From Podarcis gaigeae (lineage: Eukaryota), in NCBI GenBank assembly GCA_964106915.2, contig OZ066922.1: 64,000 nt of DNA; one strand, given 5' to 3'. The position numbers and the translations under genes are program-made. Numbering within the stretch: the first letter of the stretch is position 1; each line of letters starts with the position of its first letter. Positions 133-60,493 of the stretch are shown piece by piece. The notes beneath the pieces are model-generated. The model saw only the letters and a program-made list of their open reading frames with translations, did not search any database and was not told the origin of the DNA.

Positions 133-190
133 CTATCAGTTCGGCTGATGAAGTCACTGCTTGCACCTATGCTGATCTTTACGACAACAG
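133..190 (+). CDS. WD40 gene exon (ISSADEVTACTYADLYDN)
   Basis: Acceptor ctctctttcag, donor gtacaa; phase 1 to 2. Confidence 0.75.
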
Positions 191-3100
191 GTACAAAGGA
201 TGTTGTTGTTTCAATTTTAAAAATGAAAAGTATAAATGGCTAAGAAAATACAAGTAAGCTGGGAAGAGGTCTGTACCGAATGATCTTATAAGAATAATTT
301 GGACACCTGCAAGATGGACGTTTCAGACAAGTCAGCCAGTTGAAACACACATAAACTCTGGCAGCATAGAAAAGTATTGAAGTTACCCAATAAGTCTTCA
401 GGAAAGGCTGTGCATATTTTGTATGCAATTTGCATGGGTGGGGAACCTGTGGCCCCGCAGATGTTGCTAGACTCCAGTTACCATAATTTCTGACCATAGG
501 CTATACTTCCTGGGGCTAGACTTCAAGTCCAACAACATCTGGGAAGATACAGCTTTCTCCTCCCTCCTTTTGCACACTTACTTGGCAGTAACGCAAATAA
601 AAAATAGAGAGTTTTACCTCGGAGTAAGAATTTTATGAGACATACTTGCAGCTGAGTGTTTGGGTTTCCAACATTAGTGTTTTAAACTTACAGTGGTACC
701 TTGGTACTTGAATGGCTTAGTTGTCAAATAAATTGGCTCCTGAACGCTGCAAACCTGGAAGTAAGTGTTCCAGTTTTCAAATGTTTTTTAGAAGCTGAAT
801 GTCCAACATGGCTTCCGCTTGAGTGCAGGAAGCTCCTGCAGCCAATTGGAAGCTGTGCCAATTGGTTTTCAAACGGTTTCGGGAGTCAAACGACTCCCGG
901 AATGGATTAAGTTCAAGAACCAAGGTACCACTGTGGTGTATTTATAGCCCTTACACTTGCTGAGAATACATGTAACACTTGTGATGGTGGGTACAGGTAG
1001 ATTAAGGATGATAAATCATGCCAGTCAGCGCGAAATAAGTCATTGTTTGTTAAGCTTCTGGATTTTTGTATACATATGAAAATCAGTGATGCCACACTGC
1101 TTATGTAGTTGTTTCCTTTTGGAATCCAACACAAAAGGGGTTATATTAGAATTGGCTTTCCTCTTGAAATAACACATTTCAATTTTTTAAAAGATACATC
1201 ATCTCTGTTGGATTGGGACAGAAGATCAGTATTTTCCCAGTAAGTATAAATAAATGTTAAGTCTAGCTGCTCCACTATAAGATGTTGGGGAGGCCAAAAA
1301 TGGGAAATTTTAGGTGTTCCACAATGAACTCAGTAAGAAATTGGAAGCCCAGAATAACTATACCAGCATTGTGCACCCGAAAGATGGACAGGCATCTAAT
1401 ATGGAAAATGACTTGTTCAGGATAATGGACACCTGTCTGGGCAGGTTTTTCGAATGTTTTTTGTCTGATCAGTTCAAGGAGCTTTTCCTTACAGCCAATG
1501 ACTTCTTTGAGTAGTATGAACAGTTCCCATTCCCTCTTAACACTACAGACATGAACAGAAAGTGTGATGTCTATATGTGCATAAGTATGATTGGTTTATT
1601 GGAGGCTATTAGTAATGTCAACTACATGTTCAAAGGCAGAATGCTTCTAACACATGCCAGGGAGCACAACTGGGAGTGGGGTGTTTCCTTCAAGATATCC
1701 CATGTAGGCTTCCTCGAGGCATCTGATGGGTCACTGGAGGAAGTTTTGGGGAATGACTGTAGCTCAGGGACAGGGCACAGTCTTTATGTGCAGAAGGTCC
1801 TAGGTTCAGTCACCAAGTAGGGTTGGGAAACACCTCTGTCTGAAACCAAAGTGAGCTAATGCCACAATACACATCTGGTTGGATTGATGGTGTGGCTTGG
1901 TATAAAACAGTTTCCTATGCTCATTTCTAAGTATGATGCCAAATTATATGGACCTTTGGTCTAACCCAGTTGGCTGTTATTATGTTTCTAATCTCTATTA
2001 TATGGTCCCCCCCCCCCAATCAGAATAGCCTTGAGTCTACAGCTGATCCTGCCTACCCCATGGATGTAAATGAAAGGCAAAGTTGTCTGACAATATTTTT
2101 CATCTATAGCTTCAGCATTGCCTTTTTCTAGAAATATGAGTAGCACCAGTAGCACTGCTTCAACATACATTATTAACCTATGTTTAAGTAAAACAATTTT
2201 TTTTTGTTTATCCATAAAAGAATTATGAATCTCTGGAACTAAAGATGGAACTGAAAAGTTTTTAATTTCAGGATATTGATGATGAAGTCGTTGAAGGATC
2301 ATACCCACAACTGGACTGGATTAGAAGTATGGTAGGACATTAACTTGCAGTGAGAAATGGTAGTTAAACATGAATAAAAGTTGAAAAGATTTCTATATGA
2401 ATTTGCTTAGAGCAGGGGCAGGGCCACAAAAATGTTGCTGAACTACAACATCTGTTATCCCTGCCAAATAGCCATGCTGGATGGGACTGATGAGACTTGG
2501 GAGACCAATAACATGTGGAGAGCCAGAGATTCTTTACTCTTAGTTTAGAGCATAAGATACATCCCATGTGTGCTTGATAGGGCAATGACGGCATGAGAAT
2601 GACCACTTTGCCATTGCACCATGCAGGAACAGGGCCACAAGGACGATATTTTATGTTTAGCTTCGTGTCCTCCACATTTCTTGGCCACTTCTAGTTTTGA
2701 TGGTGAAGTTCTCATATGGAATCTGCTATCGGGACATCTCTGCAGCCGTCTTCATGCTGTAGACAGAGCAGCAAGGGAAGGAGAAACAGGTGAGTAGGAT
2801 TAGACCTTTTGCTGTGCTAAAATAAAAGCTTGAACTCACAAGGTGTGGTGAGAGAAGTGAAAAGCAAAGTATGTACAGTGTCAGTAATGAAAATGTTTTT
2901 AAAATGGATTTCTTGTCTGCGCCACCATAAATGGTAAAAAAAAATCTCTGGTAGTTGGAGTAAATTGCACAGTGAGCTACAACCACTGCACAAACCTAGC
3001 TGACCAGGCAATAACTACTTGAAGCCATTTAAATATTATTCTGTGTGACAGCCACAGTATGTGCAAATTCCAGCCCCCATTGTTGTTGCTACATATTTTA

Positions 3101-4036
3101 AAGGGGAAAGTGGCTATGTTGATACACACAGGGTTGTTTTTATCTGGGTCTCCATTTCCAAGTACAAAATGTTGAGTTAAAAGCCGCCCTGAAATTAGAC
3201 TCCCAAGTCATTTGGTGTGTTTTCAAATCACAAGATGAACCAAGTTTTTTTTAATCTGGGTCTCCATTTCCAAGTACAAAATGTTGAGTTAAAAGCCGCC
3301 CTGAAATTAGACTCCCAAGTCATTTGGTGTGTTTTCAAATTACAATACGAATCAAGCAGATTGAGGAAGCTGTGAGCAAATTTTACTATGTGACAAGGTG
3401 CTACACCTTTACCTGACATACGGCAACATCCTCCCACACAGAACAATTAAAGCCGCTCTCCAAGGAGTGGTAATCATATGCACAGGTGGCCTCCATCTGC
3501 CTCCACTACTGACACCAGTCTCCCTGCCTGCTCGCATAGTTGGTAAATGTTAGATGTGCACCATCTCAAGCCTGGACTGAGGGTGCTTCCTGTGAGAGTT
3601 TATTGTAGGAGCGCAGAGTCCACACAATGGAAATGTCACCCAATTGCCAGCCTCTGTGTACCTGCAGGTATATGTACCTGTGCCATCAATTGCGGATAAC
3701 ACCTGTTGCCCACAAGAACTTATTCAGTAATAAATTTGCTAGTTTTGATGGTGCCACAAACCTGTGTGTGAGAGGAAGTGTCTTGTGGAGTCTCCCACTG
3801 TACCTGGGCGAGCTGGGCTTGGCTTTACAGATTACAACAGTGAAATGCATTGCTGACAAATATCCTGTGCTGGTGTGAGATTGTGGAAATTTTGCTGGAA
3901 ATGCTTTAATGGTTCTTTTTGTCCCCTCCCAGAGGATTTAACCATCAATAAAATCATTTTCCTCTTATCAAGGCTGGAAAAGAAGAAAACAGCTGCAATG
4001 TTAGTGGCTAGTGGACCTAGAGGTAAAGACAAAAGT

Positions 4037-4102
<66 letters not shown>

Positions 4103-7100
4103 TAGATGATAGAGTGGGGCTGGGGTTCAGAGGCCTACATATGCTTAGATCCCATATTCTTCTCACGGCTCCAGGTGCTCACCAAAAACCTGCTCAGTGA
4201 TTGGGGAACCCTTCAAAATGGCTGCCAATGCAGTGCAAGGGGCTGCAGTCCAAAGGGTGTTTCAGGGCCAGGCTAGGCAGGACACCATTCATACAACTAT
4301 CAATTGTGTGAAAGGTGATTTGGGAGGCTGGGGACTTCAGCCTTGCTGCATTCCTCACACCATACATTTAAAGAACATTGCTTCCCCACCCCCTGAAATC
4401 TGGGAACTGCAGTTTACTCCTCACAGAGCTATAATTCCTAGCACCCATAACAAACTACAGTTCCTGGGATTCTTTAGGAGAAACAAAGCGTTTTAAATGT
4501 TGGTGTGGATGTCATCCAACTATTGTTATTGGGAGAAAAAAACTCCCATTGCAGCCATTAGAGCTTTCCTCCCAATCCATATATCAGGCAAGCATGGCAG
4601 GGAGGTGGGGGGAAACACCCCGATGGCACCTGAGGCTGTCGTAAGTTGCAGCACTTGTGACTTTGATGGTGTAGCACTGTGGCCAATCAGGTGGAGCCCC
4701 CAGTCCAAAGCTCACCTCCGCCATTAACTCAATGGCTTTAGGTAAGAGTCTTTCCCTCTCCCTCTCTCCTTTAGTCCCCCCATTTGCAATATGGGAGAGA
4801 ATAATCCTGATTTACATGGTTACTGTAAGGATGACAGTTATCTAATGCACAGGAAGCACTTCGAAGCACCTGAGAGTGATACCCAAATACAAAATATTAT
4901 TAAGAGGATGTTGTTCAACCATTGACACTTAAGAGGCAATGCCTCTTAAGATTAGTGCTGTTGAAAGAAGCACTCAGATCAAACAGGCATTTTAGCAAGG
5001 GAGATCCTTTCTTAAGAAAGGCAACTCAAAATTTCTTCCTTGTGCCAACTGCATATTGGGAAGAGGCTTTAGGCCTTGCGTCAGTACCTAGATTTGTGGG
5101 AGGATGTTACTCTGTAGAAGCTTTCTGAAAGAGTCTGTATAGAGCCTATTGTGTGACCATTGTAGGGTGAGAATGAACATATCAGTACAGAGAAAAAATT
5201 CAGGTTTCAGAGTTTCTAGCAGAAAACCAACACTCCCCACCCCACCCCCAACCACAGGGCAGACTTCTACTTTAAGGGGGGAATGCAGAAAATCTCATTT
5301 TCATCTTTGTGATACTGTTATTGATACCGTGATTGCTGTTATTTCCCAGGTTATATTGCATTCTGGAATATATATGGCCGTGGGAGACTTTTTGCTTATT
5401 TCTCTAGTGTAAGTGCTGCTCATTTTCTGGAAAAATGTTTTATATGTTGCTAATTTCCATTTGTAAGGCCTCTGTATGTTTTTATTAGTGCTGTGAGATT
5501 CCTAACAGTTTGGAAACAAACAAAATAAGAACTAGATCTTTAAATAAGTCATAACTGGAAGTGGCACACATTCATTTAGGTTGCAATCCTAAACAGCAAG
5601 GCTAGGTAGGTAGTGGTCCTCCAGATGTTGCTAGATCACAACTCGTATCTTTGCAGACCACTGTCCATGCTGGAGTCCAGCAACATCTGGAATGTCATAG
5701 GTTCCCTTCCCCTGCTAGCTACACTTACTGGGGGAGTAAGCCCCATTGCATGCAGTAGGGTCAACTTCTGTGTAAATATGCATAGGATTGCTCTGTGCAT
5801 TAGGGCTTTGCCTGTATCCTCTTCTGACTTTTCATAGGATGGTAGTCTAAGCATCAAGGTGAACCCAGAGACAGTGCTAGCCCAGGGCATTTTGCGATCA
5901 GAGACAAAGGACAAGATGCCACCCTGCTGCTTCCACATACAGAAGCTAGATAGACTGAGAGCTGACTCTCAGTGGTATCCCTCCCTGAGGGCAACAGGTT
6001 ACTTTAGGGGATACAGAGTATGGGGCATGCACAACCCTATCCCCTCGAACAACCCTGTTTGCATAGCGCAAAACCATGGGTTGGTATTACATTAGAAGCA
6101 ACCCAATAGGTAACATAATGTGCAATCAAAATAAAGAGTTAACAAAAGCCTATTGATAGTTGGGCTGGATCCATGCATTTCACATGTTTGCTTGACTTAA
6201 GGGCAACCTTAAAATGTAGGCACTTCTTGCCTGTGTGTGCCGAAATTGCACTTAAAATCTCACCACATGCACCAACTGAAATGCAAAACTAATCATTCAC
6301 CAAAAGTGACACAAGTAACGAAGTGCTCCTTAGAGTGCAAAGAAGCTTCAATCCAACGCACCCTTCTAGGCAGGGCAGGGAGTGAGTTCCATTGAACTCG
6401 GCTGAATTTATTTCTGAGAACATCATCACAGAATTATGCTGTTAGTCCTCCCTCTTGAGAGTAAAAATAAAATAATGCATTTCCGCCACAACTTTAGTAT
6501 TGAAGCTTCTGCAATCCAGCATACACGATTGTTATTTATTTTATTTATTTTTCCTTGCTTGCAGTCAAGAGAGAGATCCACAGTCAGTGACGTGGCAGTT
6601 GATGACAAGGACTTCCTCTTGTGTGCAGGAGACCAACTGGGCTTTCTCTATATCTGGAACATTGCAGAATATGCCATTAATGGCCCAGAAGCCAAGCCAC
6701 CAGTTTGTGAGAGAAACATTTTTATTCAAAACCCAAATGTTTCATATTTGCTCCCGAGTGTACAGTATGTCCTTACCTTAGTCTCCCCTCCTTCTTTTTT
6801 TCAAATAGTACTTCACAGCTGGAACACTCACAACTGCAGCATAACCAGGTAAGATACGCTGAGGAACACAAGGCCCATGAGGAAAGCTGGCGAATCCAAT
6901 GGGGACAAGCTCCCTTTACTTACATCTTAGGCCCCCTTCTCATGGTGCACTGGTGGTGGCAGTGTAGCACTTTTGCCTGCACTGCCTGTTTGGGTAGGAA
7001 AGCACAGATCCTGTAGAAGAGCAATGGGGAGCTGGATTCAGACAGTGCACTGTTGGAGATAAGCAGTGTCCAGTGCACAGCGGAATGATGAAAAGTACGT

Positions 7101-10100
7101 GCCAACATGCTCTATATTACTTTATTTACACTTCAAAGCTGGTAGTTTACAGAAAAAACATCTTCCCTCTGCCGGAGCAGAGAAAGGCATCCTCTCTCCT
7201 CTAAAGCACGGAGAGAAATCACACTGAACTGCAAAGAACAGTGAAAAACAGGAAACCAGTGTACGTCACATCCAGTCTCCTTTCCCGTGAGAAAACCCAA
7301 CAGCACTTGACTGCGGAATGTAAACATTGTCTTGTGACAAGCACTTCGCTGCTCAGTGAAGGAAGCAGAAACCAACATGCACTGGGTGCTTATCTCCCTC
7401 CCCCCATCCCAATGGGCCAACTTTGAAAGGCACACGACATCACAATGACATTTGAAAGGCACATGACACCACAATGTCATTAGGTGACTGTTTTTCCCTA
7501 TCACCATGCAAGGTGCCTTGCAAGCCACAACTATCAGCACTGTGCTTTGCAAGTCCTGAGCATCAGCCGGTTGTCTACGCTGGCAAAGTACTGTGTATGG
7601 CAGGGCTTTGTACAAACCCCCTTTTGGCTCAACTGCGTCTTTATTTGCCCCACACGTGACATCATATATGATGTCGGAAGTTGGGCATGTGGGTATGGCT
7701 TGGCATCGAGGAGTTCTATGAGTGTTGCCATTCTAGTTGTGGAAAGAACTTGAGAAACAAGATGTTTAAGAGAGTAAGGAAATTCCACAGCAGTGCCTAT
7801 TTTCAGAGCAGTTGTCAATATAACAAACTAAACCCATTTTCTTTTTCCAATGGAGTAGCATCAGCCTTATGAATGAGCACCAGCTTCTCCTCACTACTTC
7901 TTTAGACTATAATGCAAAGTTGTGGAGCCTAAAAGGGGAATATATAGGTAAGATTTAATTTTAGATGGTAATACATATACATTATTACACACTACTCCAA
8001 TCTCCCAGCAGTGTGAGATTCCAAGTGCTTACCCAGGGTTCATGTTTCCTTTTGGTAATGAGGTACAGTGGAAGCTGTGGTCTCTTTGATATATGGTTTA
8101 TTTACACATATATACAACTTAAGCCTACAGTGGAGGGGTTCACAGCATCAACAACCCAAGAGTATTGTTTCCTTCATAGCAGCAGCCTTTAATTCAAACA
8201 GAAACCAAACATCGTGCTGTGCCTTTCTGGCTTTCCTTCTAGATCACAACATTACCAAACTCAACTCTAAACTCTGGCTTTTGGCGTTCTCACTATCTGT
8301 GAGTTGAGGGGCCCTACCTATTTGCTGTATTGCACAGAGCCCCCTTAATCCTATGTTCTCTTAATGGCCCATCACCCAGGCAATTATCTCATCACGAAGC
8401 TAGCCTGGCTTACATTTTGACACCTGTTGGACCCAGGAATAAGGTGTTGCACACACAAACTGATAACTATACACACTGCATGATCTGTCTGCAACCCACA
8501 TACCCTGATCCTGTTTTTGCCACATCAAACTTTCTCTGATTGCATCTGGAATGGAACCATCACCAATGCATTGTCAAAGAGCAGAAGTCTATCAATTGCT
8601 ACTAACCATGATGGCTACTGCTTGTCCTCCACAGTTGAGGCAGTAATGCTTTTGCACACGTCTCTGGAAGGCATAGGGCTGGAGATTGCTCTTGTGCTCG
8701 GGTCCGGCTTGCTGGTCTCCTACAAGCATGCTCATAGGTGTCCACTGTGAGAGCAGGATGCTGGTCTAGGTGGGCCATTGGCCTGATCCTGCAAGCTCTC
8801 GTTATGTTCTTATGTGGTTGTTCATTCCCTAGTACTGTAACAGTGGTTTTGGTTTTTTGAAAGCTTTATTTTGGGTTGTATCCAATCAAGTTACTCAGTT
8901 AGCAGGTCTTCCACCTGCACAATGGGATTTCCTCTTCCTTTACACTCCTGTTGTCCTCCCAAATCTGTCCTGTGGTTTTCTCCAACCCTTTGGAGCAGAT
9001 TGGTTGGGGGAGGCAGGGAGCAGAAATTTCATTGCTCAGGCAGATGTTTTTATCTAACAGGACAACTTGGTTGGATATAGTCCTTTGTCTACATGCAAGT
9101 AAAAACTGAAGATATGCATAACAGAGAAGATTCTGAGGTTGTCAAGTATAGCATTTTAAAGTAACTTTACTTTTTTTTTAAAAAAAGGTACATTTGGTCA
9201 AAGAGAACCATGGAACATAAAAAAGAAGTCATCTTGGGGACTATCAGAATCCAACCCAAGTTCAGAAACTACCTCTGACTCTTTTGGACAGGAATCTACA
9301 AGAACCTTTGACACACAGAAGAAATCCAAGATGGATGCTGAGGTAGGAATATTATCATCACTGGGCAGTATTTGAGTTTTATTTAGAGCAGACACATTGA
9401 AATTAATGAACATGACTAAGTTAGGTCCATTAATTTCAAAAGGTCCACTATGATTAAAAGTTATGGTAGCTGAGTATATCCCCTTGTCTTGTCTTTACAT
9501 AAGCATTTGGCTTCATTACCATCTAGCTCCTGTCCCCAAGCCAGGTATACTATATTCCTGATAAGGATAACATTTCATGTATCTGATGAAGTGGCCTGCA
9601 GCCAATGAAATACTCAGCAGTATACTCCCCATCCCCAAGCTCAATATTTCTTGAGATGTGAAACTACATAGCTTTTTATATCTGGGCAGATCTGCGATTT
9701 TTGTAAGTCTCTGATAAGTATAATGAAAAATATGAAGAATCAGAAAATGGGATAAAATTTAATGTAGTGTTCACTGAGTACTGTATTGGTCCTCTGCCTT
9801 CTTCTCAGCTCTTTTTATGGAAATGAATGCTTTATGCCTGCTTGACACGTGGAGGGACTGGAAAACAGCATGATTTTCAGAATATATATATATTTTTTAA
9901 AACTATTATGTTGGCTTATCCTGGTTTTGCTACTTTTTTTGCCTGCTCCAGCAGCTTCTAACAAAATAAAATTATTGTAACAAAATAAAAATAAAAAGTA
10001 AAATTGATTTGAAATTGTCTAAAAAACCCTGTTCTTTTAATATACCAAACATAATGGCTAAACACATTATACACAATACTTTCAGTTACAGATAGGTAGC

Positions 10101-11394
10101 CGTGGTCTGCCATAGTCAAAACAAAAAAAAAATCCTTACAGTAGCACCTTAAAGACCAACTAAGTTAGTCGTCAACAGGCTCATCACAGCTATCTGCCAA
10201 TCACCCATTCCCACCACCCTTCTGAGTAATACCCCTCCCCACCTTCTCACTATATAGAAGGGTCTGGAAACTTCTGTTTCAGTGTATCTGAAGCAGTGTG
10301 TATGCACACGAAAGCTCATACCAAGAACTAACTTAGTTGGTCTTTAAGGTGCTACTGTAAGGAATTTTTTTTTTGTTTACACAATACTTTGTTACTTTCG
10401 GAACAAAAAAATTTTTTTTGATCTGTAATATATGTTTTATAGAAAGTAATTTACTACCTTGCAACCATTTTATTACCCTTTCTCAGTCCTACTGCTACTA
10501 TCACCCTTTGCTTCGAAGCTAAAATTATACTGCACAATTGTGTCACCAACTCACCCCACAGGTTCTTTCTTCCTTCTGGGAAAGCCTTGTAATTATAGTT
10601 GCTGTTTCACCAAAAACCTTTATTTTCTGGGAAATCATTGCCCCCTGTGTACTTTGAGGGCACTTCTCTGCCCAGCGTAAATGAGTGGTATGTTATCCCA
10701 TAGATGATTTGGGACACTTGCACTTCAAAGATGGTAACAGATGATGAACTTGCTGAAGAATTGAAGCAAAGGCAGATAGACAGACTACACAGGTGTGTAC
10801 AACTTGGATTTAAATCCTCTTTATTCACCGACAACATACTGGCCCATACTAGGTTAATTTAACAGATATGCGAGTCTTGCATGGCGTAATAGAATGCTGC
10901 ACTTTATAAAAGACACAGGACAACTGAAAATTAAATTTTGTTGACAGATGAGTTCATACTCAAGTGCGCAGTCTGTGTGTTTGATACCGTAGCAACATGT
11001 ATTTCAAAAAACTGCTTTTTGCATCTACCATTCCCTTTGTGTGCCTTGTTAGTAGTTTCCCAGAAATTATTGGAAGTGATCTGCAGACTCCTAGCTATCC
11101 ATATAATCTATTCTCTCCCCATTCCCTCACCTAATTTCCCAAATTTAAGGAAGAAGTCTTAATTTTGTATCATTTGGAAAAGTATCCTTCTTACAACTAC
11201 TAGCCAGAAAGAAACCAGCACACCATTTATCTTTCAGATCAAAGCAGTTCCAGTGGAAACCTATTCAACATGATGCAAACCGAATGAATTCTTATCGCTC
11301 TCTTCCACTGTGTGAGTTAGCTGACACACAGCTTGCCTTCCACAAACCAAATCTAGCAGCAGAACTTGATGACCCATTTCAGTTGGAAATTTAA
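133..11394 (+). CDS. WD40-repeat protein of the WDR49/WDR95/WDY-like family; 3' portion, 12 exons, 5' end outside the window
   Basis: GT-AG exons 133-190, 1194-1239, 2272-2331, 2627-2789, 3933-4022, 5350-5408, 6565-6706, 6809-6848, 7859-7947, 9188-9342, 10704-10792 and 11238-11394 join with consistent phases into one open frame of ~381 aa ending ...AELDDPFQLEI*. WD-repeat motifs include GHKDDILCLASCPPHFLATSSFDGEVLIWN, CAGDQLGFLYIWNIAEY and HNCSITSISLMNEHQLLLTTSLDYNAKLWSLKGEYIGTFGQ. Confidence 0.88.
436..565. mobile_element. ~130-bp palindromic hAT-like MITE family; other copies near 2415-2530, 5605-5715, 13222-13280 (partial), 47293-47423 and 53094-53222
   Basis: Recurrent core tggccctccagatgttg...actacaact...caacatctggagggcc with inverted arms, seen six times in the window. 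Confidence 0.65.
691..933. mobile_element. Tc1/mariner (Tigger/pogo-like) MITE
   Basis: TIRs CAGTGGTACCTTGGTACTTGAA / TTCAAGAACCAAGGTACCACTG; TA at left, TG at right (mutated TSD). Confidence 0.8.
1194..1239 (+). CDS. WD40 gene exon (RYIISVGLGQKISIFP)
   Basis: Acceptor ttttttaaaag, donor gtaagt; phase 2 to 0. Confidence 0.8.
1750..1925 (+). mobile_element. Squam3-like tRNA-derived SINE, degraded
   Basis: Head ctgtagctcag...gcagaaggtcctaggttca and tail ggtataaaacagtttcctatg resemble the recalled Squam3 consensus. Confidence 0.6.
2272..2331 (+). CDS. WD40 gene exon (DIDDEVVEGSYPQLDWIRSM)
   Basis: Acceptor tttaatttcag, donor gtagga; phase 0 to 0. Confidence 0.7.
2627..2789 (+). CDS. WD40 gene exon (EQGHKDDILCLASCPPHFLATSSFDGEVLIWNLLSGH...)
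   Basis: Canonical GH...WN WD repeat; donor gtgagt. Confidence 0.9.
3142..3340. repeat. Direct duplication of 87 bp (3142-3228 and 3254-3340)
   Basis: Two identical copies separated by 25 bp. Confidence 0.95.
3933..4022 (+). CDS. WD40 gene exon (DLTINKIIFLLSRLEKKKTAAMLVASGPR)
   Basis: Polypyrimidine tract plus cag acceptor, donor gtaaag; phase 1 to 1. Confidence 0.85.
4038..4102 (+). repeat. (AGAT)n microsatellite
   Basis: ~16 perfect units starting 15 nt after an exon donor. Confidence 0.98.
4345..4517. mobile_element. Palindromic MITE (possibly PIF/Harbinger-like)
   Basis: Inverted arms cacaccatacatttaaa / tttaaatgttggtgtg and ggaactgcagttt / aaactacagttcc. Confidence 0.6.
5350..5408 (+). 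CDS. WD40 gene exon (GYIAFWNIYGRGRLFAYFSS)
   Basis: Acceptor tttcccag, donor gtaagt; phase 1 to 0. Confidence 0.87.
6565..6706 (+). CDS. WD40 gene exon (SRERSTVSDVAVDDKDFLLCAGDQLGFLYIWNIAEY...)
   Basis: Acceptor ttgcttgcag, donor gtgaga; inside ORF 6436..6852. Confidence 0.88.
6809..6848 (+). CDS. WD40 gene exon (LLHSWNTHNCSIT)
   Basis: Acceptor tttttcaaatag, donor gtaaga; phase 1 to 2. Confidence 0.85.
7859..7947 (+). CDS. WD40 gene exon (ISLMNEHQLLLTTSLDYNAKLWSLKGEYI)
   Basis: C-terminal half of a WD repeat; donor gtaaga; phase 2 to 1. Confidence 0.88.
8583..8814 (+). mobile_element. CR1 LINE 3' end
   Basis: ccatgatggcta...ggatgctggtctaggtgggccattggcctgatcc...ttatgttcttatg tail, shared with the copy at 40820-40956. 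Confidence 0.65.
8873..9083. mobile_element. MITE with short TIRs
   Basis: GGGTTGTATCCAA ... TTGGATATAGTCC imperfect inverted termini. Confidence 0.45.
9188..9342 (+). CDS. WD40 gene exon (GTFGQREPWNIKKKSSW...)
   Basis: Family-typical GTFGQxxxW motif; donor gtagga; phase 1 to 0. Confidence 0.85.
10083..10377 (+). mobile_element. Penelope-like retroelement fragment with an inverted terminal segment
   Basis: ~51-bp inverted repeat (10119-10169 vs 10327-10378), 13-bp TSD tacacaatacttt (10070-10082 and 10378-10390), and a hammerhead-like motif at 10284-10321. Confidence 0.75.
10704..10792 (+). CDS. WD40 gene exon (MIWDTCTSKMVTDDELAEELKQRQIDRLH)
   Basis: Acceptor cccatag, donor gtgtgt; phase 0 to 2, which fits both neighbouring exons. 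Confidence 0.7.
11238..11394 (+). CDS. WD40 gene terminal coding exon (...SYRSLPLCELADTQLAFHKPNLAAELDDPFQLEI*)
   Basis: Acceptor tatctttcag, TAA at 11392-11394, AATAAA downstream at 11626. Confidence 0.8.
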
Positions 11395-11625: not shown

Positions 11626-11631
11626 AATAAA
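11626..11631 (+). terminator. Putative polyadenylation signal of the WD40 gene
   Basis: First AATAAA seen, ~230 nt after the stop codon. Confidence 0.5.
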
Positions 11632-17644: not shown

Positions 17645-43623
<25,979 letters not shown>

Positions 43624-53611: not shown

Positions 53612-53812
53612 TTAGTCAGATGATCGGCCTATTGATGGATCAATATTAAGAAACTCCTTAATTTTGTCATATAGGACCAACACCAAGGCACCGCCTGTCC
53701 CACGAAGTACATTTGAAAAGGCTCCCCGAAAAAAGGCATTTAATCCTTCCTGGTTGTATATCTTGAAAAAGCAGTCAATGGTTCCTTTGTACTGACGTTC
53801 AGCCTCGCCACT
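53612..53812 (-). CDS. SLC25A31: SLC25A31 exon 6 (coding part)
   Basis: [66 protein letters not shown]. Confidence 0.95.
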
Positions 53813-56800
53813 CTGTGTTAAAATAATTTTAAACAAAGACAGATGATTGGAAAATGTACATGCTTACTATGTGGCAAGGGACTAATCTGGCATTTGGTAT
53901 TTTTATAATTTTCAGTCTAGGGTCTGATATATAGTATTAGGCATTTTTGTAATTATAAGTCTAGAAACACCTCTCACTAATTTTATCTCTTTTTCAATAT
54001 AAGAACCTTAATGAGTAAATGCTTCCCTGATGTAGTTCTCTGCAGCTAAATTTAGCAAGTCTGTGATCTTCTTGTGATGTTTCTTTTAAGCTTCAGAGTT
54101 AAACAAGGTCATGTCATTCCTCAGGGTGTTTTGAAGCATGCTGATTCTTGGATAATGTCTGAAGCATATTTTTGGAACATTGTTCTTCACTGCCTTTTCG
54201 CTGAACTTCACATGGTTCTTCACCCCCATCACCAACATCGACAAGTACCAATCTAGAAGTGTTTAGATTTCCCCAAAGTTGGTAGTATGGTTTTTTTGAT
54301 AGATATTTTAAAAAATGTGTTTGCATCAAAATATTTACACCGGAGAATTTTCTTAATCTATTTTTTAAGATAGATATTTATATTGAGATAGTCAAATAGT
54401 ATTCCATATAAATCTGTAAGATATAAAAAATTAATTTCTCTTGCTTTCAAATTGGCATACTGTACTTCCTTTTCAAAAGTCTCTAATGTTGAAAAAAAAA
54501 TCCAGAAGGAAGATTACATAAAATTACATAAGTTGTTTCTCTTTTTGTAAATAAAACAGCTGTCAGGCAGACAGACCCATTGCTGAAATAAACAGCAGAC
54601 CTTAAAGAAAGCACACGACAGAGCTTGCGTTCTTTGCACCACAGGGCGACAACAGGATGGTTACTGCCCCCTTACCCCCAACAGGAAAAGAATAAAAATA
54701 AATGTATTTCTCTTAACACAGAGACACACACTGCTGCTTTGAAATTAAACATGAAACAGGAAAATCACCTGGTTTGCTCAGCACATCAACAGGCAAATAC
54801 ATGTTTCTGACTAGCCAGCTGGGCAACCACACAAATATGTGGTCAAAATGTAGGGTCCACATACCCAGGTAAATGCTTCCTCTCCACACCTGAGAGAGTC
54901 CTGGTGATAGCACTTGTTATATGTGATATGCTATGTTGTGCAATTAGCTGATTGATAAAAATGGCTGCAGGAGCCTCTGCAAATGCAAATTGAAGGATGT
55001 CAGTGGGGGACAGGAGAAGAGGGTAGCTTTGAAATTTGTTAATATTTCCCCTCCTAGAATTCCCCCCAGGACTCTACCCTTCTAGATAGGCCTCCTGTGC
55101 TTAGACACCAGCAAGTATATGTTGTTTACCTGCATCATCATGCGTCTTCTGACAGTGTCAAAGGGGTATGACAGTATGCCAGAAAATACAGTCACAGCTT
55201 GAGCTATTGCAAAAGATACGACAAATGGTGTTTCTTTTGGATTTGGCAACATTCCCTAAGAAGAGAAAAGAGAAATAAGAATTCACTGGGGTAACTTGAG
55301 AATCTAAATGGAAAAACAGATGCTGTCAAATCATTATATTGCTTCAGAATTTCCTAAGTGCATTGTATTTTGAATGGATTATTTTACATGGTCAGTGTAG
55401 TTGGAAACATATTCTTTTCTCCTTTTGTTTTACGCTTTACACATGGCAAACAAGCCAAATGATTTTTTGGGGGAGGGGGCAAATAACATATATTAAGATT
55501 GCAACTTAAGCACATTTAACTTGTGCGATTGCAGCTTTACACGCTTTGCAGCTGGCCAGCTGATATCACACAAATTAAAGACACACAAGACAGAGCTTTT
55601 AGGCTCTCAGGCTTGCTTACTGGCCTTTGGGAAAGTCTCAAGTGGGCTCTGGGAGGCTCCTGCAAGATCTTTCGCAGTCCGAACGAGACTGTCCAGGAGC
55701 CTGGTTAGCATCCCTTAGAGCTTAAAAGCCATTTCTGTAGCAGGAAATCACAAGAGATTTACTTCTAAATAGAAATGCACAGGATTCATCTGTGAGGCAC
55801 ATTAATTAACTAAATAGTATAAATGTTTTATCTATACATATGAGCATCCCCATGTCCAATGAATACACTGAGATCTTGATCGTAAGCGCTGCCCAATTTA
55901 ACAGTCAACTTGCTTTCTCATTTTAAATCAACAGGGCAGCCATTGTGAGCAAAGGAGCATCATATTGCATCAGACCTTTGGGCTTCAGGAACCAATTAGC
56001 AAATTGGGATGAATAAATGTGTAGAAATAATTAGCTTTAAAACAAGTGTTATCATCAACCATAAGGAACAACAGAGCTCCTCCAGATCATGTAGTAGATT
56101 TATTAAATTTATAAAATAATAACAAACTAAAGGAATACAAACCAAATTGGGCATGTCTTTTTATTTTTAAGTCTTAGCTCTCTGTTTCTGCAGTAGGATT
56201 AATAATATCTTAGCTGATAGGATAAATACTGTAAAATGCATCCATAATAAAGGTGACAAATAATCCTTTTTTTTAATGGGAAAGGGTGAGTTTGATCAGA
56301 AAACTTACTTTTATGGTGTCATAACATCCAAAATAGGATGCCCGATAGACAATGATCCCCTGTACTGAAACACCAAATCCTTGATATAGGCCGGTAATGC
56401 CATCTTTTTTTGCAATTTTACCAATACAGTCAGCAAGGCCTTTGAACTGTCGCTCTTCCATACCTAAAATGAAAGAAGAAATAACAAAACTAGGGGAGCA
56501 CTTTAGCTCTAAGTATTCCCCACAATGAACAGGGGAACTATTACTATTAATTCATTTTTTTATCCGGTCCTTCTTCCTAAAGGAGCCCAGGGAGCCATAT
56601 AAGGAGCCATACAACAGGTAAAATATCATGAAAAACATTTTTCAAAATAAATACAACAATTTTCAGCTGCTGAAAACCTACTACCCATCACATACTAAAC
56701 AGTTGGGTTGAAACCCCCCCTCCCCCCGGTTACATCAAAATGATGGTAATGGAGGGAACAAATGCATATTTCTAGGAAGGGAGCTCCATAAACTGCGGCA

Positions 56801-59800
56801 CCACCACAAAGAAGGCAGAAACACAAACTGCCAGTCTCAGCGCACAACCCTTAAAATATGAAGATGAAGCTCTTACCTTTTCCAATGTCAGCACCTAACC
56901 GGGTCCGTGCAAAGTCTAATGGATATACCACACACAATGAAGTTGCTCCAGCTGCTCCACCAGAAGCCAGATTTGAAACAAACCACCTTCCGAACTGAAA
57001 ATGAAAAACTGCTGAGTTCAAAAATAGGGTTTGTAACAATCCTCAATTTTTATTTTTTTTTACAAATACCTTAAGCAATGGTGTGATGACACAAGCCTGA
57101 AATTACTGTATTTTTTACATTCCCAAGGTGATGCTTGAATATAAGCAAATCAACAGTGTCCTATGGAACTTAGATTTGACGGCAATATTTTAGTTGAGAG
57201 AATTCAAGATGGAGTTTCCTCTTGCAAATTCCCATGAGAAAATCCACAACCTGCATTGCAAAGGGCGCACCAAACTCAAGACTTGGTGGCAAAACTTGGC
57301 TTGTGTGTAAAACAACCTGAGGCTCTTTCACAAAATCCATCCCAACACAAATTGTGCCATGAAAATTGAGTAACAAAGGAACTTCAAAGGGAGGCAGAAA
57401 GATGAAACCAGTGAATTATAATTCATCAAGAGTTTCAGTGTAGTCTCAAACCTGTAGTTTGAAGCAGGACAAAGTTGTTGTTGTTTAATTATTACACTTG
57501 TGATAATTGGTTTGCCAACGCCAGGATGTCTGAGTTACCCTCAACTGTTGTATGAATGACCAAATTAAATTATGCAATTATCACTGTCATTGTACTTACT
57601 GCATTTCATTTACCCGTGACCACATTGTTTACCTTCTCCCCTTCCCCATGTGTGTGTATCTATTTATACACACATACGTAACTCAGGATAACACTTCATT
57701 CATCTGATGAAGTAGACTGTGGTCCATAAAGGCTTCTGCCATAATTTATGTATTTAGTATTTATTTAGTATTTATGGTGCCACAAGTTATTTTCGAATAA
57801 CTAGGTTGTGTTTTGAAGTAGAAGATTTTTTTGGTTTCTTCACATTTTGAGGGAAGGTTGAGTGGTAGTCAACTGAGTTTTATCAGAGTAGACCTATTAA
57901 AATGAATGGGCCTAATTTAAACGGGTCTACCCTTAACTTAGTTAAATATGACCCAGAATCTTTTGGTACTGGCATTTACAACTTTACAGTTTCAATGGGA
58001 GTTATTATACACAACTAACTTAAGCTAGATGGGAACTTCAATATTCAAGACACACATTGTTGAAACTATTTATTTGAAAATATAACAGTATGATAATATA
58101 AAAAATCAAAAAGACTTTTACCCTTTGGAGCATTTATATCACAAAGTATGTCAAGATGTATTTCATGTTCTTTCAGAGTAAGAGCTTTAAAACTGAAATG
58201 GCTTACATATGAATACTGACAGAAAATAAGTATGCAATGCAAGGTATTAAATCCAAATGCAGAGTATTTGTAAATGGTCATTAAGCATGAAAGAGTACCA
58301 GGTGCTTTAGAAAGTATGATTCTGGCAATGCAGAAGGCACTGGGAGGAAAGAAAAGGAACCAGCTTATTAGAAAAAAATCCCTTAAAAAATCCCATGACA
58401 GTATCAAACAAAGATTACATAGCAATAAAAGATGTCCCCAAAATACATATATAGTATATTATATGGCCTTCATGGATCACTGCCTTGCCGTGGCGAAGGG
58501 GCTTGAATAACTCAGAGAAGCTATGAGCTATGCCGAGCAGGGCACCCAAGATGGACAGGTAATAGTGGAGAGTTTTGACCAAACATGATCCACCTGGAGC
58601 AGGAACCGGCAAGCCACTCCAGTATCCCTGCCAAGAAAACTCCATGGACAAAGACAAAAGGCATATGAAGACAGAAGTGCCTGGTGTGCTCTGGTCCATG
58701 GGGTCACGAAGAGTCGGACATGACTAAACAACTAAACAACAACAACAACATATGGCCTATAACAGCCTTTTTGTGTTGCTGAGGTGATTGTATGTTGTTG
58801 ATCCCCCTTCTCAAACTGTGGAACGTTAGGGCTGATTCACAATGACCGCTCTCCACATCAAATGGAGGGTGCCCTTAGCATGCCTGCATGAACCCCCCCT
58901 CGATCCTACGTGACTCCAGAGCACTCCTGGACCGCCTCTCCAAGTCGCAAACCTTGAGGTTCCTACCAAACCTCAGTTTAAAGTATCTATCGCAACTGGG
59001 GAGGCGTAGCCAGGGAAGCGGATCAAGTAGGGTGGGTCCCCTCTTTAAGCTGATTCACAAAATCCCCATCACTTGGGATCAATTCACACATTTATTTTGC
59101 TCCATAAGAAATACTCCCATGCACATGGGAACAATATGAATCAGAAACAGACAGCGGTAATTTCCACAGCTGCAACAGCGCCTAAAAATTCTGTGTAAAG
59201 TACAATGTCACCTCACACTTTACTTTGATGTTGAAATTACGGCCTCACACATTACTGTGCATGAGTGGGGTTTTTTTGGGGAGGGGGGGACAGCAGCCCA
59301 AACCTATATCTAAACTAGTCCTGTTGCTGAATGTGTGAACTGTCCCCACTGATTTTTCTTTTTTTAAAAAAAATATACTTATAGAGCTTGATTTGCAATG
59401 GCACTTTCACATGCACAAATTTTCATGTTATGCTGCAGTCACAGAGTGATGAACAACAGAGACGTGTAAACCTGCCCTTAAAGACTGCCTTTTCAGTATT
59501 CCTTTCGAAGGAGGCAGCTCTGCACTCTGATGGTGTCCTTTGAAAATACATGCATCTACCTTTACAGATCAAAAAAGCAGAGCTGGGGAACAGTCAGTAC
59601 CATCAGTGCTATTAAGAGAAAACCATTTCCAAACTGCTGATTTACGCCTCTACATACCATGCGACTGGTCAAGTCGAACAGGTTTGGAGAGCTCCAGGCA
59701 TCAGTGAGAGGATTGCTTGCTCCACTTACTAAGAGCAATTGCTTTTTTCATTTTGGCTTAAAGTACCAGCTGGACTTTTTTTTTTTAAAGGCCTAATTCA

Positions 59801-60493
59801 GATAAAGAATGTATTTGTAAATAGCATGATACTGAGCTTCAAGTAGAAACATCCTACACTAATAAGCTCATTCTTCAGAGTACAGACTTGCATTGCTCAA
59901 ATAGCACCATTCACAAACAAGAGGAGGTATCAGCAGGCTTCAGTGAACTCCAAGGTTTGCAGAAGTACAAAAACAAAAACCACAGTAAAAACTCTAAGAT
60001 GTAGCCCCAAAATATCCCAATGAGGACTGAGCATGCACAGTAACTTTGGAGCACTGGCCTACTTGTAGGGAGGAGAGAAGGAATGAAGTATCCTGGAAAA
60101 GGGTTGGCAGTAACCCTGAACATTTTATTGCAAGTTCCACTTGTCACATATGATGGGGATTAATATTGTTCACGCAATTACTGTACTCATATTCATTAGA
60201 ATTTTTTCTTAAATACAAATCCCAATGCCTCTTTTATACACCACCTATTGAAATATACTGTATACTATTAATAATTCAAAAGGATATCCCAATTTCTTCA
60301 TGTTTGGACCAAGCAAAATGGTTTTGGACACATCAGCAATAAACAAAATGTTACACCACATTTACCTGTTTATCTTTATCCACTCCAGCCATGAAAATCT
60401 GCTTGTATTTGTCCTTAAAAGCAAAGTTTAGGGCTTGAGTTGGGAAGTACCGGATAACATTGGCAAGATTGCCACGCCAGAAGCTGGCAAATC
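53612..60493 (-). CDS. SLC25A31: ADP/ATP translocase 4 (ANT4), exons 2-6; exon 1 outside the window
   Basis: Exons 60366-60493, 56877-56994, 56309-56463, 55130-55255 and 53612-53812 are in frame. The ANT signature RRRMMM is present. The layout matches the six-exon ANT4 structure (ANT1-3 have four exons) and the gene is next to HSPA4L. Confidence 0.95.
55130..55255 (-). CDS. SLC25A31: SLC25A31 exon 5
   Basis: [42 protein letters not shown]; 126 nt. Confidence 0.95.
56309..56463 (-). CDS. SLC25A31: SLC25A31 exon 4
   Basis: [51 protein letters not shown]; 155 nt. Confidence 0.95.
56877..56994 (-). CDS. SLC25A31: SLC25A31 exon 3
   Basis: [39 protein letters not shown]; 118 nt. Confidence 0.95.
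58470..58749 (+). mobile_element. Bipartite (5'+3') BovB-derived non-autonomous element
   Basis: BovB 5'-UTR-like block joined near 58666 to the same BovB 3' end as the 40441 and 42378 copies; (CAA)n tail; 9-bp TSD atatggcct (58461-58469 and 58750-58758). Confidence 0.8.
60366..60493 (-). CDS. SLC25A31: SLC25A31 exon 2
   Basis: [42 protein letters not shown]; 128 nt. Confidence 0.95.

What the first reader, a model, noticed from the sequence alone, without database searches (positions are those of the whole stretch)
133..11394. Intact WDR95/WDR49-like WD40 gene tail-to-tail with HSPA4L: candidate retained ohnolog of WDR95
Seen: 12 in-phase exons with no internal stop encode several WD repeats and end ~6 kb from the HSPA4L stop, on the opposite strand. 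Recalled, not checked: in mammals the order is SLC25A31-HSPA4L-PLK4 with no such gene, while mouse Wdr95 and human WDR95P lie tail-to-tail with HSPH1, an HSPA4L paralog. Inference: the Hsp110 plus WD40 gene pair predates vertebrate whole-genome duplication, and this lizard keeps the HSPA4L-linked copy that mammals lost. That would be an unnamed, probably cilia/sperm-associated paralog, sitting beside two genes known for testis expression in mammals (HSPA4L and ANT4).
Basis: partly seen in the sequence, partly recalled or inferred. Interest (0 to 1): 0.8.

Follow-up and report, generated by a model that had tools for sequence, protein, structure and literature searches.

The report
Unnamed WDR95 sister gene lacking EF-hands
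This lizard DNA holds an intact, unnamed twin of the cilia/sperm-tail gene WDR95 that arose in early vertebrates, shed its calcium-binding domain, is kept from sharks to frogs, turtles and lizards, and was not found in mammals.

Summary
Observation confirmed: 12 AG/GT-bounded exons give 381 codons with no internal stop, ending 6,250 nt from the HSPA4L stop. The window is a Podarcis lizard; RefSeq already predicts the gene under '-like' names. It belongs to an orthogroup (clade A) spanning sharks, sturgeon, gar, bowfin, coelacanth, lungfish, amphibians, turtles and lizards. Clade A is sister to WDR95 (clade B), which the same species also keep; amphioxus and other invertebrates fall outside. 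A lies between PLK4 and HSPA4L in gar; mouse Wdr95 lies tail-to-tail with another Hsp110. All 11 introns are shared; dN/dS is about 0.3. All 29 mammalian hits are WDR95. Not shown: expression, function, the Hsp110 link in pre-duplication outgroups, or absence at DNA level. Best reading: an early-vertebrate ohnologue encoding an EF-hand-less CFAP337-family axonemal adaptor. The scan had not reported this gene on other DNA.

The parts
133..190 (+). WD gene exon (first in window; upstream exons lie outside)
1194..1239 (+). WD gene exon; the family's conserved Trp reads Leu here
2272..2331 (+). WD gene exon
2627..2789 (+). WD gene exon, Pfam WD40 repeat
3933..4022 (+). WD gene exon
5350..5408 (+). 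WD gene exon
6565..6706 (+). WD gene exon, query of the large protein search
6809..6848 (+). WD gene exon
7859..7947 (+). WD gene exon
9188..9342 (+). WD gene exon; end of second propeller and start of the low-confidence tail
10704..10792 (+). WD gene exon; predicted tail helix
11238..11394 (+). last coding exon with TAA stop
11626..11631 (+). nearest AATAAA, candidate polyadenylation signal (not tested with RNA)
17645..43491 (-). neighbour: Hsp110-family gene HSPA4L, ATG to stop, tail-to-tail with the WD gene
53612..60493 (-). neighbour: SLC25A31/ANT4, exons 2-6 (exon 1 beyond the window end)

Best explanation
The gene is an intact vertebrate paralogue of WDR95 in the CFAP337 (FAP337/WDY/WDR49/WDR64/WDR95) family, born when the chromosome segment carrying an ancestral EF-hand+WD40 gene was doubled in early vertebrate whole-genome duplication. 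Shown: two sister clades spanning jawed vertebrates, shared introns, purifying selection, loss of the EF-hand pair before sharks and bony fish split, Hsp110 neighbours on both sides. Inferred: that the doubling was whole-genome rather than segmental, and the function. Likely mechanism: the ~860-aa protein folds as two beta-propellers and, like CFAP337 and WDR64, docks on the CCDC96/CCDC113 coiled coil of the 96-nm axonemal repeat, touching CFAP57 and an inner-arm dynein stem. It would act as an alternative subunit without its own calcium-binding module, most plausibly in sperm tails or one class of motile cilia, partly redundant with its paralogues, which would explain repeated loss. Origin about 0.85, axonemal role about 0.65.
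For: Tree: A 100/100, B 100/99, vertebrates 100/100, invertebrates outside (same). Synteny: PLK4(-)|A(+)|Hsp110(-) in gar; A|Hsp110 in P. raffonei and Varanus; PLK4|A|INTU in Xenopus; Wdr95|Hsp110 858 aa in Mus pahari. All 11 window introns match in position and phase in gar, frog, mouse Wdr95 and lamprey, 10 in amphioxus. dN/dS 0.23-0.37 against Varanus and turtle; free omega beats omega=1 by 26 log units. EF-hands absent in 19 clade A proteins and in gar and frog DNA, present in B and outgroup controls. Best PDB relative by sequence and fold is bovine sperm WDR64 (9fqr_No), next by fold a Tetrahymena N-DRC-associated chain (8tid_Z). Family function: PMC6761771, PMC10504270, PMC11779644, PMC9915733; mouse Wdr95 is reproductive-organ enriched and its knockout is fertile (PMC13253961).
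Against: No Hsp110 within 10 kb of the lamprey, amphioxus or chimaera genes, so the ancestral pair is not seen directly and WDR95-Hsp110 adjacency was shown in one mammal only. Lamprey placement is unresolved (86/79 with B; AU p=0.178). WDR95 itself has never been placed in an axoneme structure among the papers read; the structural relatives are distant paralogues (19% and 16% identity, TM about 0.34).
Confidence: 0.55

Rival explanations
1. Same gene history, but the EF-hand-less protein left the axoneme and works at the centriole or basal body, or in assembly of cilia, co-regulated with PLK4 from a shared head-to-head promoter.
For: Head-to-head with PLK4 in gar (1.5 kb gap) and Xenopus (6 kb gap); the PLK4 link survives in frog where HSPA4L and ANT4 do not; domain loss and 1.5-fold faster evolution suggest a changed role.
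Against: Neighbourhood is not function; mammals keep PLK4 without it; both propellers, which make the dynein and CFAP57 contacts in CFAP337 (PMC10504270), are retained.
Confidence: 0.2
2. The gene arose by a segmental or small-scale duplication of the Hsp110-WD block in a stem vertebrate, not by whole-genome duplication.
For: The tree only brackets the event between amphioxus and the shark-bony fish split; only one shared neighbour family (Hsp110) was tested; no third or fourth copy was found.
Against: The timing coincides with 1R/2R; the human 4q/5q/13q/X regions holding HSPA4L, HSPA4 and HSPH1 are a recognised paralogon (recalled, not tested).
Confidence: 0.12
3. The gene is a largely redundant relic under weakening constraint, on its way to loss in this lizard lineage.
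For: Not found in several lineages; 7 amino-acid versus 3 silent codon differences from P. raffonei, including Trp to Leu at a site that is Trp in 68 of 76 family members; fragmentary RefSeq models in P. raffonei and L. agilis; the sister gene is dispensable for mouse fertility.
Against: Intact frame and splice sites in all lizards checked; dN/dS about 0.3 over longer spans; kept for over 400 million years in many lineages; the within-Podarcis counts are too small to show relaxation (dN 0.008, dS 0.015).
Confidence: 0.1
4. The gene is the one-to-one orthologue of WDR95, WDR64 or WDR49, moved next to HSPA4L in lizards.
For: Database names (WDR49-like, WDR64-like, CFAP337-like; one gar model is labelled WDR95).
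Against: Podarcis lilfordi and 15 other taxa carry both A and WDR95; the same position in gar and frog rules out a lizard move; bovine WDR64 scores 282 bits on the family profile against about 1,000 or more for full-length members, including lamprey. WDR49 itself was not retrieved, so its exclusion is indirect.
Confidence: 0.02

Closest known systems
WDR95 (mouse Wdr95, human pseudogene WDR95P, zebrafish wdr95)
   Same: Sister clade; about 40% identity over the full length; same intron positions and phases; tail-to-tail with an Hsp110 gene; two beta-propellers.
   Different: WDR95 is about 1,080 aa with an N-terminal EF-hand pair (kept even in opossum and echidna); this gene is 860-920 aa with none. 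It sits beside PLK4/HSPA4L, evolves about 1.5 times faster, and was not found in mammals or teleosts, which keep WDR95.
CFAP337/FAP337 of Chlamydomonas and Tetrahymena; Drosophila WDY
   Same: Same family; tandem propellers; Tetrahymena 8tid_Z is the second-best fold match. CFAP337 binds CCDC96, CFAP57 and the dynein d stem; WDY is needed for sperm to swim in the female tract.
   Different: FAP337 and WDY are described as EF-hand proteins; this one has none. No localisation exists for it.
WDR64 (bovine sperm, PDB 9fqr_No) and WDR49
   Same: Best solved relative by sequence and by fold; precedent for tissue-specific paralogues swapping at the CCDC96/113 site (PMC11779644).
   Different: Much older paralogues (19% structural identity); not orthologues, although pipelines name this gene after them.
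'Elusive' genes of Hara et al. 2018 (PMC5901865), e.g. FoxG2
   Same: Early-vertebrate duplicate kept in reptiles, missing from mammalian data, faster evolving than its widely kept paralogue.
   Different: No WDR95/WDR49/WDR64 entry was found by name in that paper's or the 2023 follow-up's supplements (lists may use IDs). The region is not gene-dense or GC-rich (36-44% GC).

Membership tests
CFAP337/WDR95 family | Sequence homology over the full length with family members | tested here: met
   38-45% identity of P0156 to WDR95 and invertebrate orthologues; best PDB hit WDR64
CFAP337/WDR95 family | Two WD40 beta-propellers | tested here: met
   AlphaFold model of the P. muralis orthologue, pLDDT 81, all-beta to residue about 730 (70); top fold matches 9fqr_No and 8tid_Z; relative orientation unsure (pTM 0.53)
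CFAP337/WDR95 family | N-terminal EF-hand pair | tested here: not met
   No EF-hand in clade A proteins or in gar and frog upstream DNA; controls positive. The 5' end of the window's own gene lies outside the window and is judged from 95-96% identical Podarcis models
CFAP337/WDR95 family | Axonemal location on CCDC96/CCDC113 with CFAP57 | not testable with these tools
   Inferred from PMC6761771, PMC10504270, PMC11779644
WDR95 orthologue | Falls inside the WDR95 clade | tested here: not met
   Separate clade, 100/100; the same species hold a true WDR95
WDR64 orthologue | Closer to WDR64 than to WDR95 | tested here: not met
   WDR64 scores 144 bits against P0156 and 282 against the family profile
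WDR49 or EFCAB8 orthologue | Groups with WDR49 or EFCAB8 in a tree | not tested
   These sequences were not retrieved; indirect only: cnidarian and sponge WDR95-type proteins were retrieved ahead of them
Ohnologue (1R/2R) of WDR95 | Duplication after amphioxus and before the shark-bony fish split | tested here: met
   1R versus 2R unresolved
Ohnologue (1R/2R) of WDR95 | Paralogous neighbours at both loci | tested here: met
   Hsp110 gene tail-to-tail at both; one family only; the mouse gene's identity as HSPH1 rests on length and recalled C-terminus
Ohnologue (1R/2R) of WDR95 | Same pairing or linkage group in a pre-duplication outgroup | tested here: inconclusive
'Elusive' gene (absent from mammals and birds) | No orthologue in mammals | tested here: met
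   All 29 mammalian hits score as WDR95; annotated proteins of 300-952 aa only, DNA not examined
'Elusive' gene (absent from mammals and birds) | No orthologue in birds | tested here: inconclusive
   No bird protein of either clade appeared, so there is no positive control; PMC3155547 lists Intu-Hspa4l-Plk4 in chicken without such a gene
Functional protein-coding gene | Intact frame, splice sites, purifying selection | tested here: met
Functional protein-coding gene | Transcribed | not testable with these tools

The most novel reading that the evidence does not exclude
Non-mammalian jawed vertebrates carry a fifth CFAP337-family subunit that lost its calcium-binding module over 400 million years ago, is co-expressed with PLK4 from a shared promoter, and swaps into the CCDC96/113 site to give a calcium-uncoupled version of the inner-dynein hub in sperm or multiciliated cells; its independent losses (mammals, teleosts, perhaps archosaurs and snakes) track changes in flagellar control. 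The A/B pair in Xenopus would be a natural test of what the family's EF-hands do.
Probability: 0.2. Interest if true: 0.7.

Novelty: new member of a known kind. Interest (0 to 1): 0.45.

Why it matters
It separates a real, ancient orthogroup from a tangle of misapplied names (WDR49-like, WDR64-like, WDY-like, CFAP337-like, even WDR95), which matters for anyone reading cilia or sperm proteomes of frogs, fish, turtles or lizards. It adds a case to the known class of early-vertebrate duplicates missing from mammals. Its twist is a clean, old loss of the EF-hand pair in a family where those EF-hands have been proposed, but not shown, to let sperm tune motility to calcium (PMC9915733). Xenopus tropicalis has both versions, so that question becomes testable. 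It is not a new kind of system, and such retained ohnologues number in the hundreds.

Tried and rejected
Word search with exon 4 found nothing because only 30-95 aa candidates are seen; the Atlas and PDB searches with single exons gave generic WD40 hits, so the large search was used, with exon 7. My first exon 3 boundary was off by one base and was corrected. The P. muralis model's extra three residues at the exon 2-3 junction were not adopted: the window has no AG at that position, and P. lilfordi, Varanus and turtle agree with the shorter form. Contig look-ups for a gecko WDR95 and one amphioxus isoform were not on record; the catshark gene was too long to show neighbours. No Rfam match in 11700-64000. 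The spliced model was never sent to a search tool: searches used single exons by reference or database protein ids; the joined peptide was built only inside local scripts from the window file. No human contig was fetched, so the suggested search for remnants between human HSPA4L and PLK4 was not done.
Full report
Observation. The twelve exons are real. With exon 3 set at 2272-2331, all junctions are AG...GT, the phases match, and the spliced frame gives 381 codons and a TAA with no internal stop, while the other frames contain 17 and 32 stops. Exon 4 is a Pfam WD40 repeat. On the opposite strand an Hsp110 gene runs from ATG 43491 to stop 17645, leaving 6,250 nt between the stops. Beyond it lie five exons of an adenine nucleotide translocase with the six-exon layout and the motif that PMC3155547 gives for ANT4. 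That paper gives the order INTU-ANT4-HSPA4L-PLK4-MFSD8 in human, anole and (without ANT4) chicken and mentions no WD gene, which identifies the Hsp110 gene as HSPA4L. The window contains no N.

Identity. The word search and family scans left the protein open, so the large search was run with exon 7. It returned near-identical models from Podarcis raffonei and Lacerta agilis and relatives from Komodo dragon, turtles, frogs and coelacanth. Window DNA is 96-97% identical to P. raffonei over long stretches, so the window is a Podarcis or very close lacertid. The peptide is 95% identical to residues 478-860 of P. muralis XP_028599198.2 and 96% to P. lilfordi models. The gene is thus already predicted by pipelines, under inconsistent '-like' names.

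Orthogroup. A word search with the Komodo protein gave 100 hits, fewer than the 120 that can be listed, and one with an invertebrate relative added full-length WDR95s, lamprey, amphioxus and invertebrates. Trees split the vertebrate proteins into clade A (the window's gene: sharks, sturgeons, gar, bowfin, coelacanth, lungfish, caecilians, salamanders, frogs, turtles, geckos, cordylid, varanid, lacertids) and clade B (WDR95: chimaera, sharks, ray-finned fish, lungfish, amphibians, turtles, alligator, squamates, monotreme, marsupials, placentals). In the finished IQ-TREE run on 36 rows A has 100/100, B 100/99 and all vertebrates 100/100, with amphioxus, ambulacrarians, lophotrochozoans and cnidarians outside (searches agree on larger sets; redundant isoforms and fragments were left out). 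At least 16 taxa have both copies, including P. lilfordi. Lamprey joins B weakly (86/79) and A+B without lamprey is not rejected (AU p=0.178), so the duplication is bracketed between amphioxus and the shark-bony fish split but cannot be assigned to 1R or 2R. Summing branches from the vertebrate node gives 1.29 (A) versus 0.86 (B) for Podarcis and 0.87 versus 0.59 for catshark, about 1.5-fold faster in A. WDR49 and EFCAB8 were not retrieved and are not in the tree; bovine WDR64 scores far below family members.

Synteny. A lies tail-to-tail with an Hsp110 gene in P. raffonei and Varanus. Gar shows PLK4(-), A(+), Hsp110(-), with 1.5 kb between PLK4 and A. Xenopus tropicalis shows PLK4(-), A(+), INTU(-), with no Hsp110 exons between. 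Mus pahari Wdr95 lies tail-to-tail with an 858-aa Hsp110 whose last exon differs from the lizard and gar one; calling it HSPH1 rests on recall, and an alligator WDR95 model named after TEX26 fits the recalled TEX26-WDR95-HSPH1 order. The same arrangement at two paralogous loci makes an ancestral pair the simplest reading, but outgroups did not show it: lamprey has a kinase and a HECT gene as neighbours, and amphioxus and chimaera have no Hsp110 within 10 kb.

Gene structure and selection. All 11 window introns match in phase and aligned position (three within a few columns in gappy stretches) in gar A, frog A, mouse Wdr95 and lamprey, and 10 in amphioxus. All 12 exons are intact in P. raffonei, and exons 1-9 have identical sizes in Varanus and the turtle Emydura. 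Over those 248 codons dN/dS is 0.23-0.37 (NG86, LWL85) and 0.30-0.48 (YN00); a free omega fits 26 log units better than omega=1. Against P. raffonei there are 7 replacement and 3 silent codon differences, too few to judge.

Domain loss. Clade A proteins have 0-71 residues before the first WD strand, against about 200-290 in full-length WDR95 and invertebrate orthologues. Pfam finds an EF-hand pair in alligator and teleost WDR95 and in the invertebrate protein but in none of six A proteins. A profile of the EF-hand region scores 93-124 bits on six B proteins, including opossum and echidna, and under 1 bit on 19 A proteins; it finds EF-hand exons in chimaera and lamprey DNA but none in gar or frog DNA upstream of A, where PLK4 bounds the space. 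Lungfish A keeps a short remnant of the helix that follows the EF-hands. The loss is therefore genuine and predates the shark-bony fish split. The window's own 5' end is outside the window and is judged from its orthologues.

Distribution. Profile scoring assigns all 29 mammalian hits, all teleost hits, and the alligator and snake hits to B. Because mammalian and teleost WDR95s were recovered at 28-42% identity in the search seeded from clade A, an annotated A orthologue of normal length should have been seen; this supports absence in mammals and teleosts at the level of annotated proteins. For birds there was no hit of either clade, and for crocodilians, snakes and iguanians the control is thin, so those absences are only leads.

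Mechanism. The AlphaFold model of the P. muralis orthologue is all-beta to about residue 730 with a disordered tail and one helix (pLDDT 81, pTM 0.53). Its best matches are bovine sperm WDR64 (9fqr_No) and a Tetrahymena N-DRC-associated chain (8tid_Z); WDR64 is also the best PDB sequence match. In the literature FAP337 depends on FAP57 and stabilises inner-arm dyneins (PMC6761771); CFAP337 has two propellers, cross-links to CCDC96 and touches the dynein d stem and CFAP57 through its WD40 domains (PMC10504270); WDR64 and WDR49 are proposed tissue-specific alternatives at this site (PMC11779644); Drosophila WDY is needed for sperm motility in the female tract, with its EF-hands proposed as a calcium sensor (PMC9915733); mouse Wdr95 is reproductive-organ enriched but dispensable for fertility (PMC13253961). 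I infer that clade A is another interchangeable subunit at this site, keeping the propellers and lacking the calcium module. None of this is shown for clade A; no expression data could be obtained.

Novelty and verdict. The class is known: 469 'elusive' genes kept in reptiles but missing from mammals and birds, 263 with early-vertebrate paralogues, typically faster evolving (PMC5901865). No paper or supplement naming this paralogue was found, and the scan's own notes hold only other candidate lost ohnologues. New member of a known kind; interest 0.45.

Limits set by the operators. The joined peptide was not sent to any search tool; it was built only in local scripts. No human contig was fetched or compared.

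Noticed in passing
L003:1-52326 (Xenopus tropicalis): PLK4, the WD gene and INTU are adjacent with no HSPA4L or ANT4 between them, so both genes are missing from this locus in the frog while the WD gene stays; this shows local synteny that PMC3155547 could not find in frog.
   Followed up: partly
L005:8478-10001 (gar); L003:3955-10001 (frog): PLK4 and the WD gene are head-to-head, 1.5 kb apart in gar and 6 kb in frog: possible shared promoter.
   Followed up: no
window:1213-1224: Three clustered base differences from P. raffonei turn W-G-R-K into L-G-Q-K, replacing a Trp conserved in 68 of 76 family members; could be real or an assembly error.
   Followed up: partly
window:44337-45534: GC-rich 1.2-kb element with 27-bp terminal inverted repeats and nested internal palindromes, about 850 nt upstream of the HSPA4L ATG; looks like a non-autonomous DNA transposon.
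   Followed up: partly
window:3133-3356: 112-bp tandem duplication (94% identical) in intron 4 of the WD gene, apparently single-copy in P. raffonei.
   Followed up: no
window:53612-60493: Intact ANT4/SLC25A31 exons 2-6 in a lacertid, extending the anole report; exon 1 lies beyond the window.
   Followed up: partly
window:6707-6808: The 102-nt intron 7 is in frame and stop-free, so retention would add 34 residues without breaking the frame; some database models skip or misjoin exon 8 here (Varanus P0008).
   Followed up: no
L001:10001-15497; L004:1-21297: RefSeq splits or truncates this gene in P. raffonei, Lacerta agilis and Emydura although the exons checked are intact, consistent with weak RNA support in sampled tissues.
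   Followed up: partly
No bird protein of either clade appeared among about 220 hits, which may mean birds lack both WDR95 and its sister.
   Followed up: no
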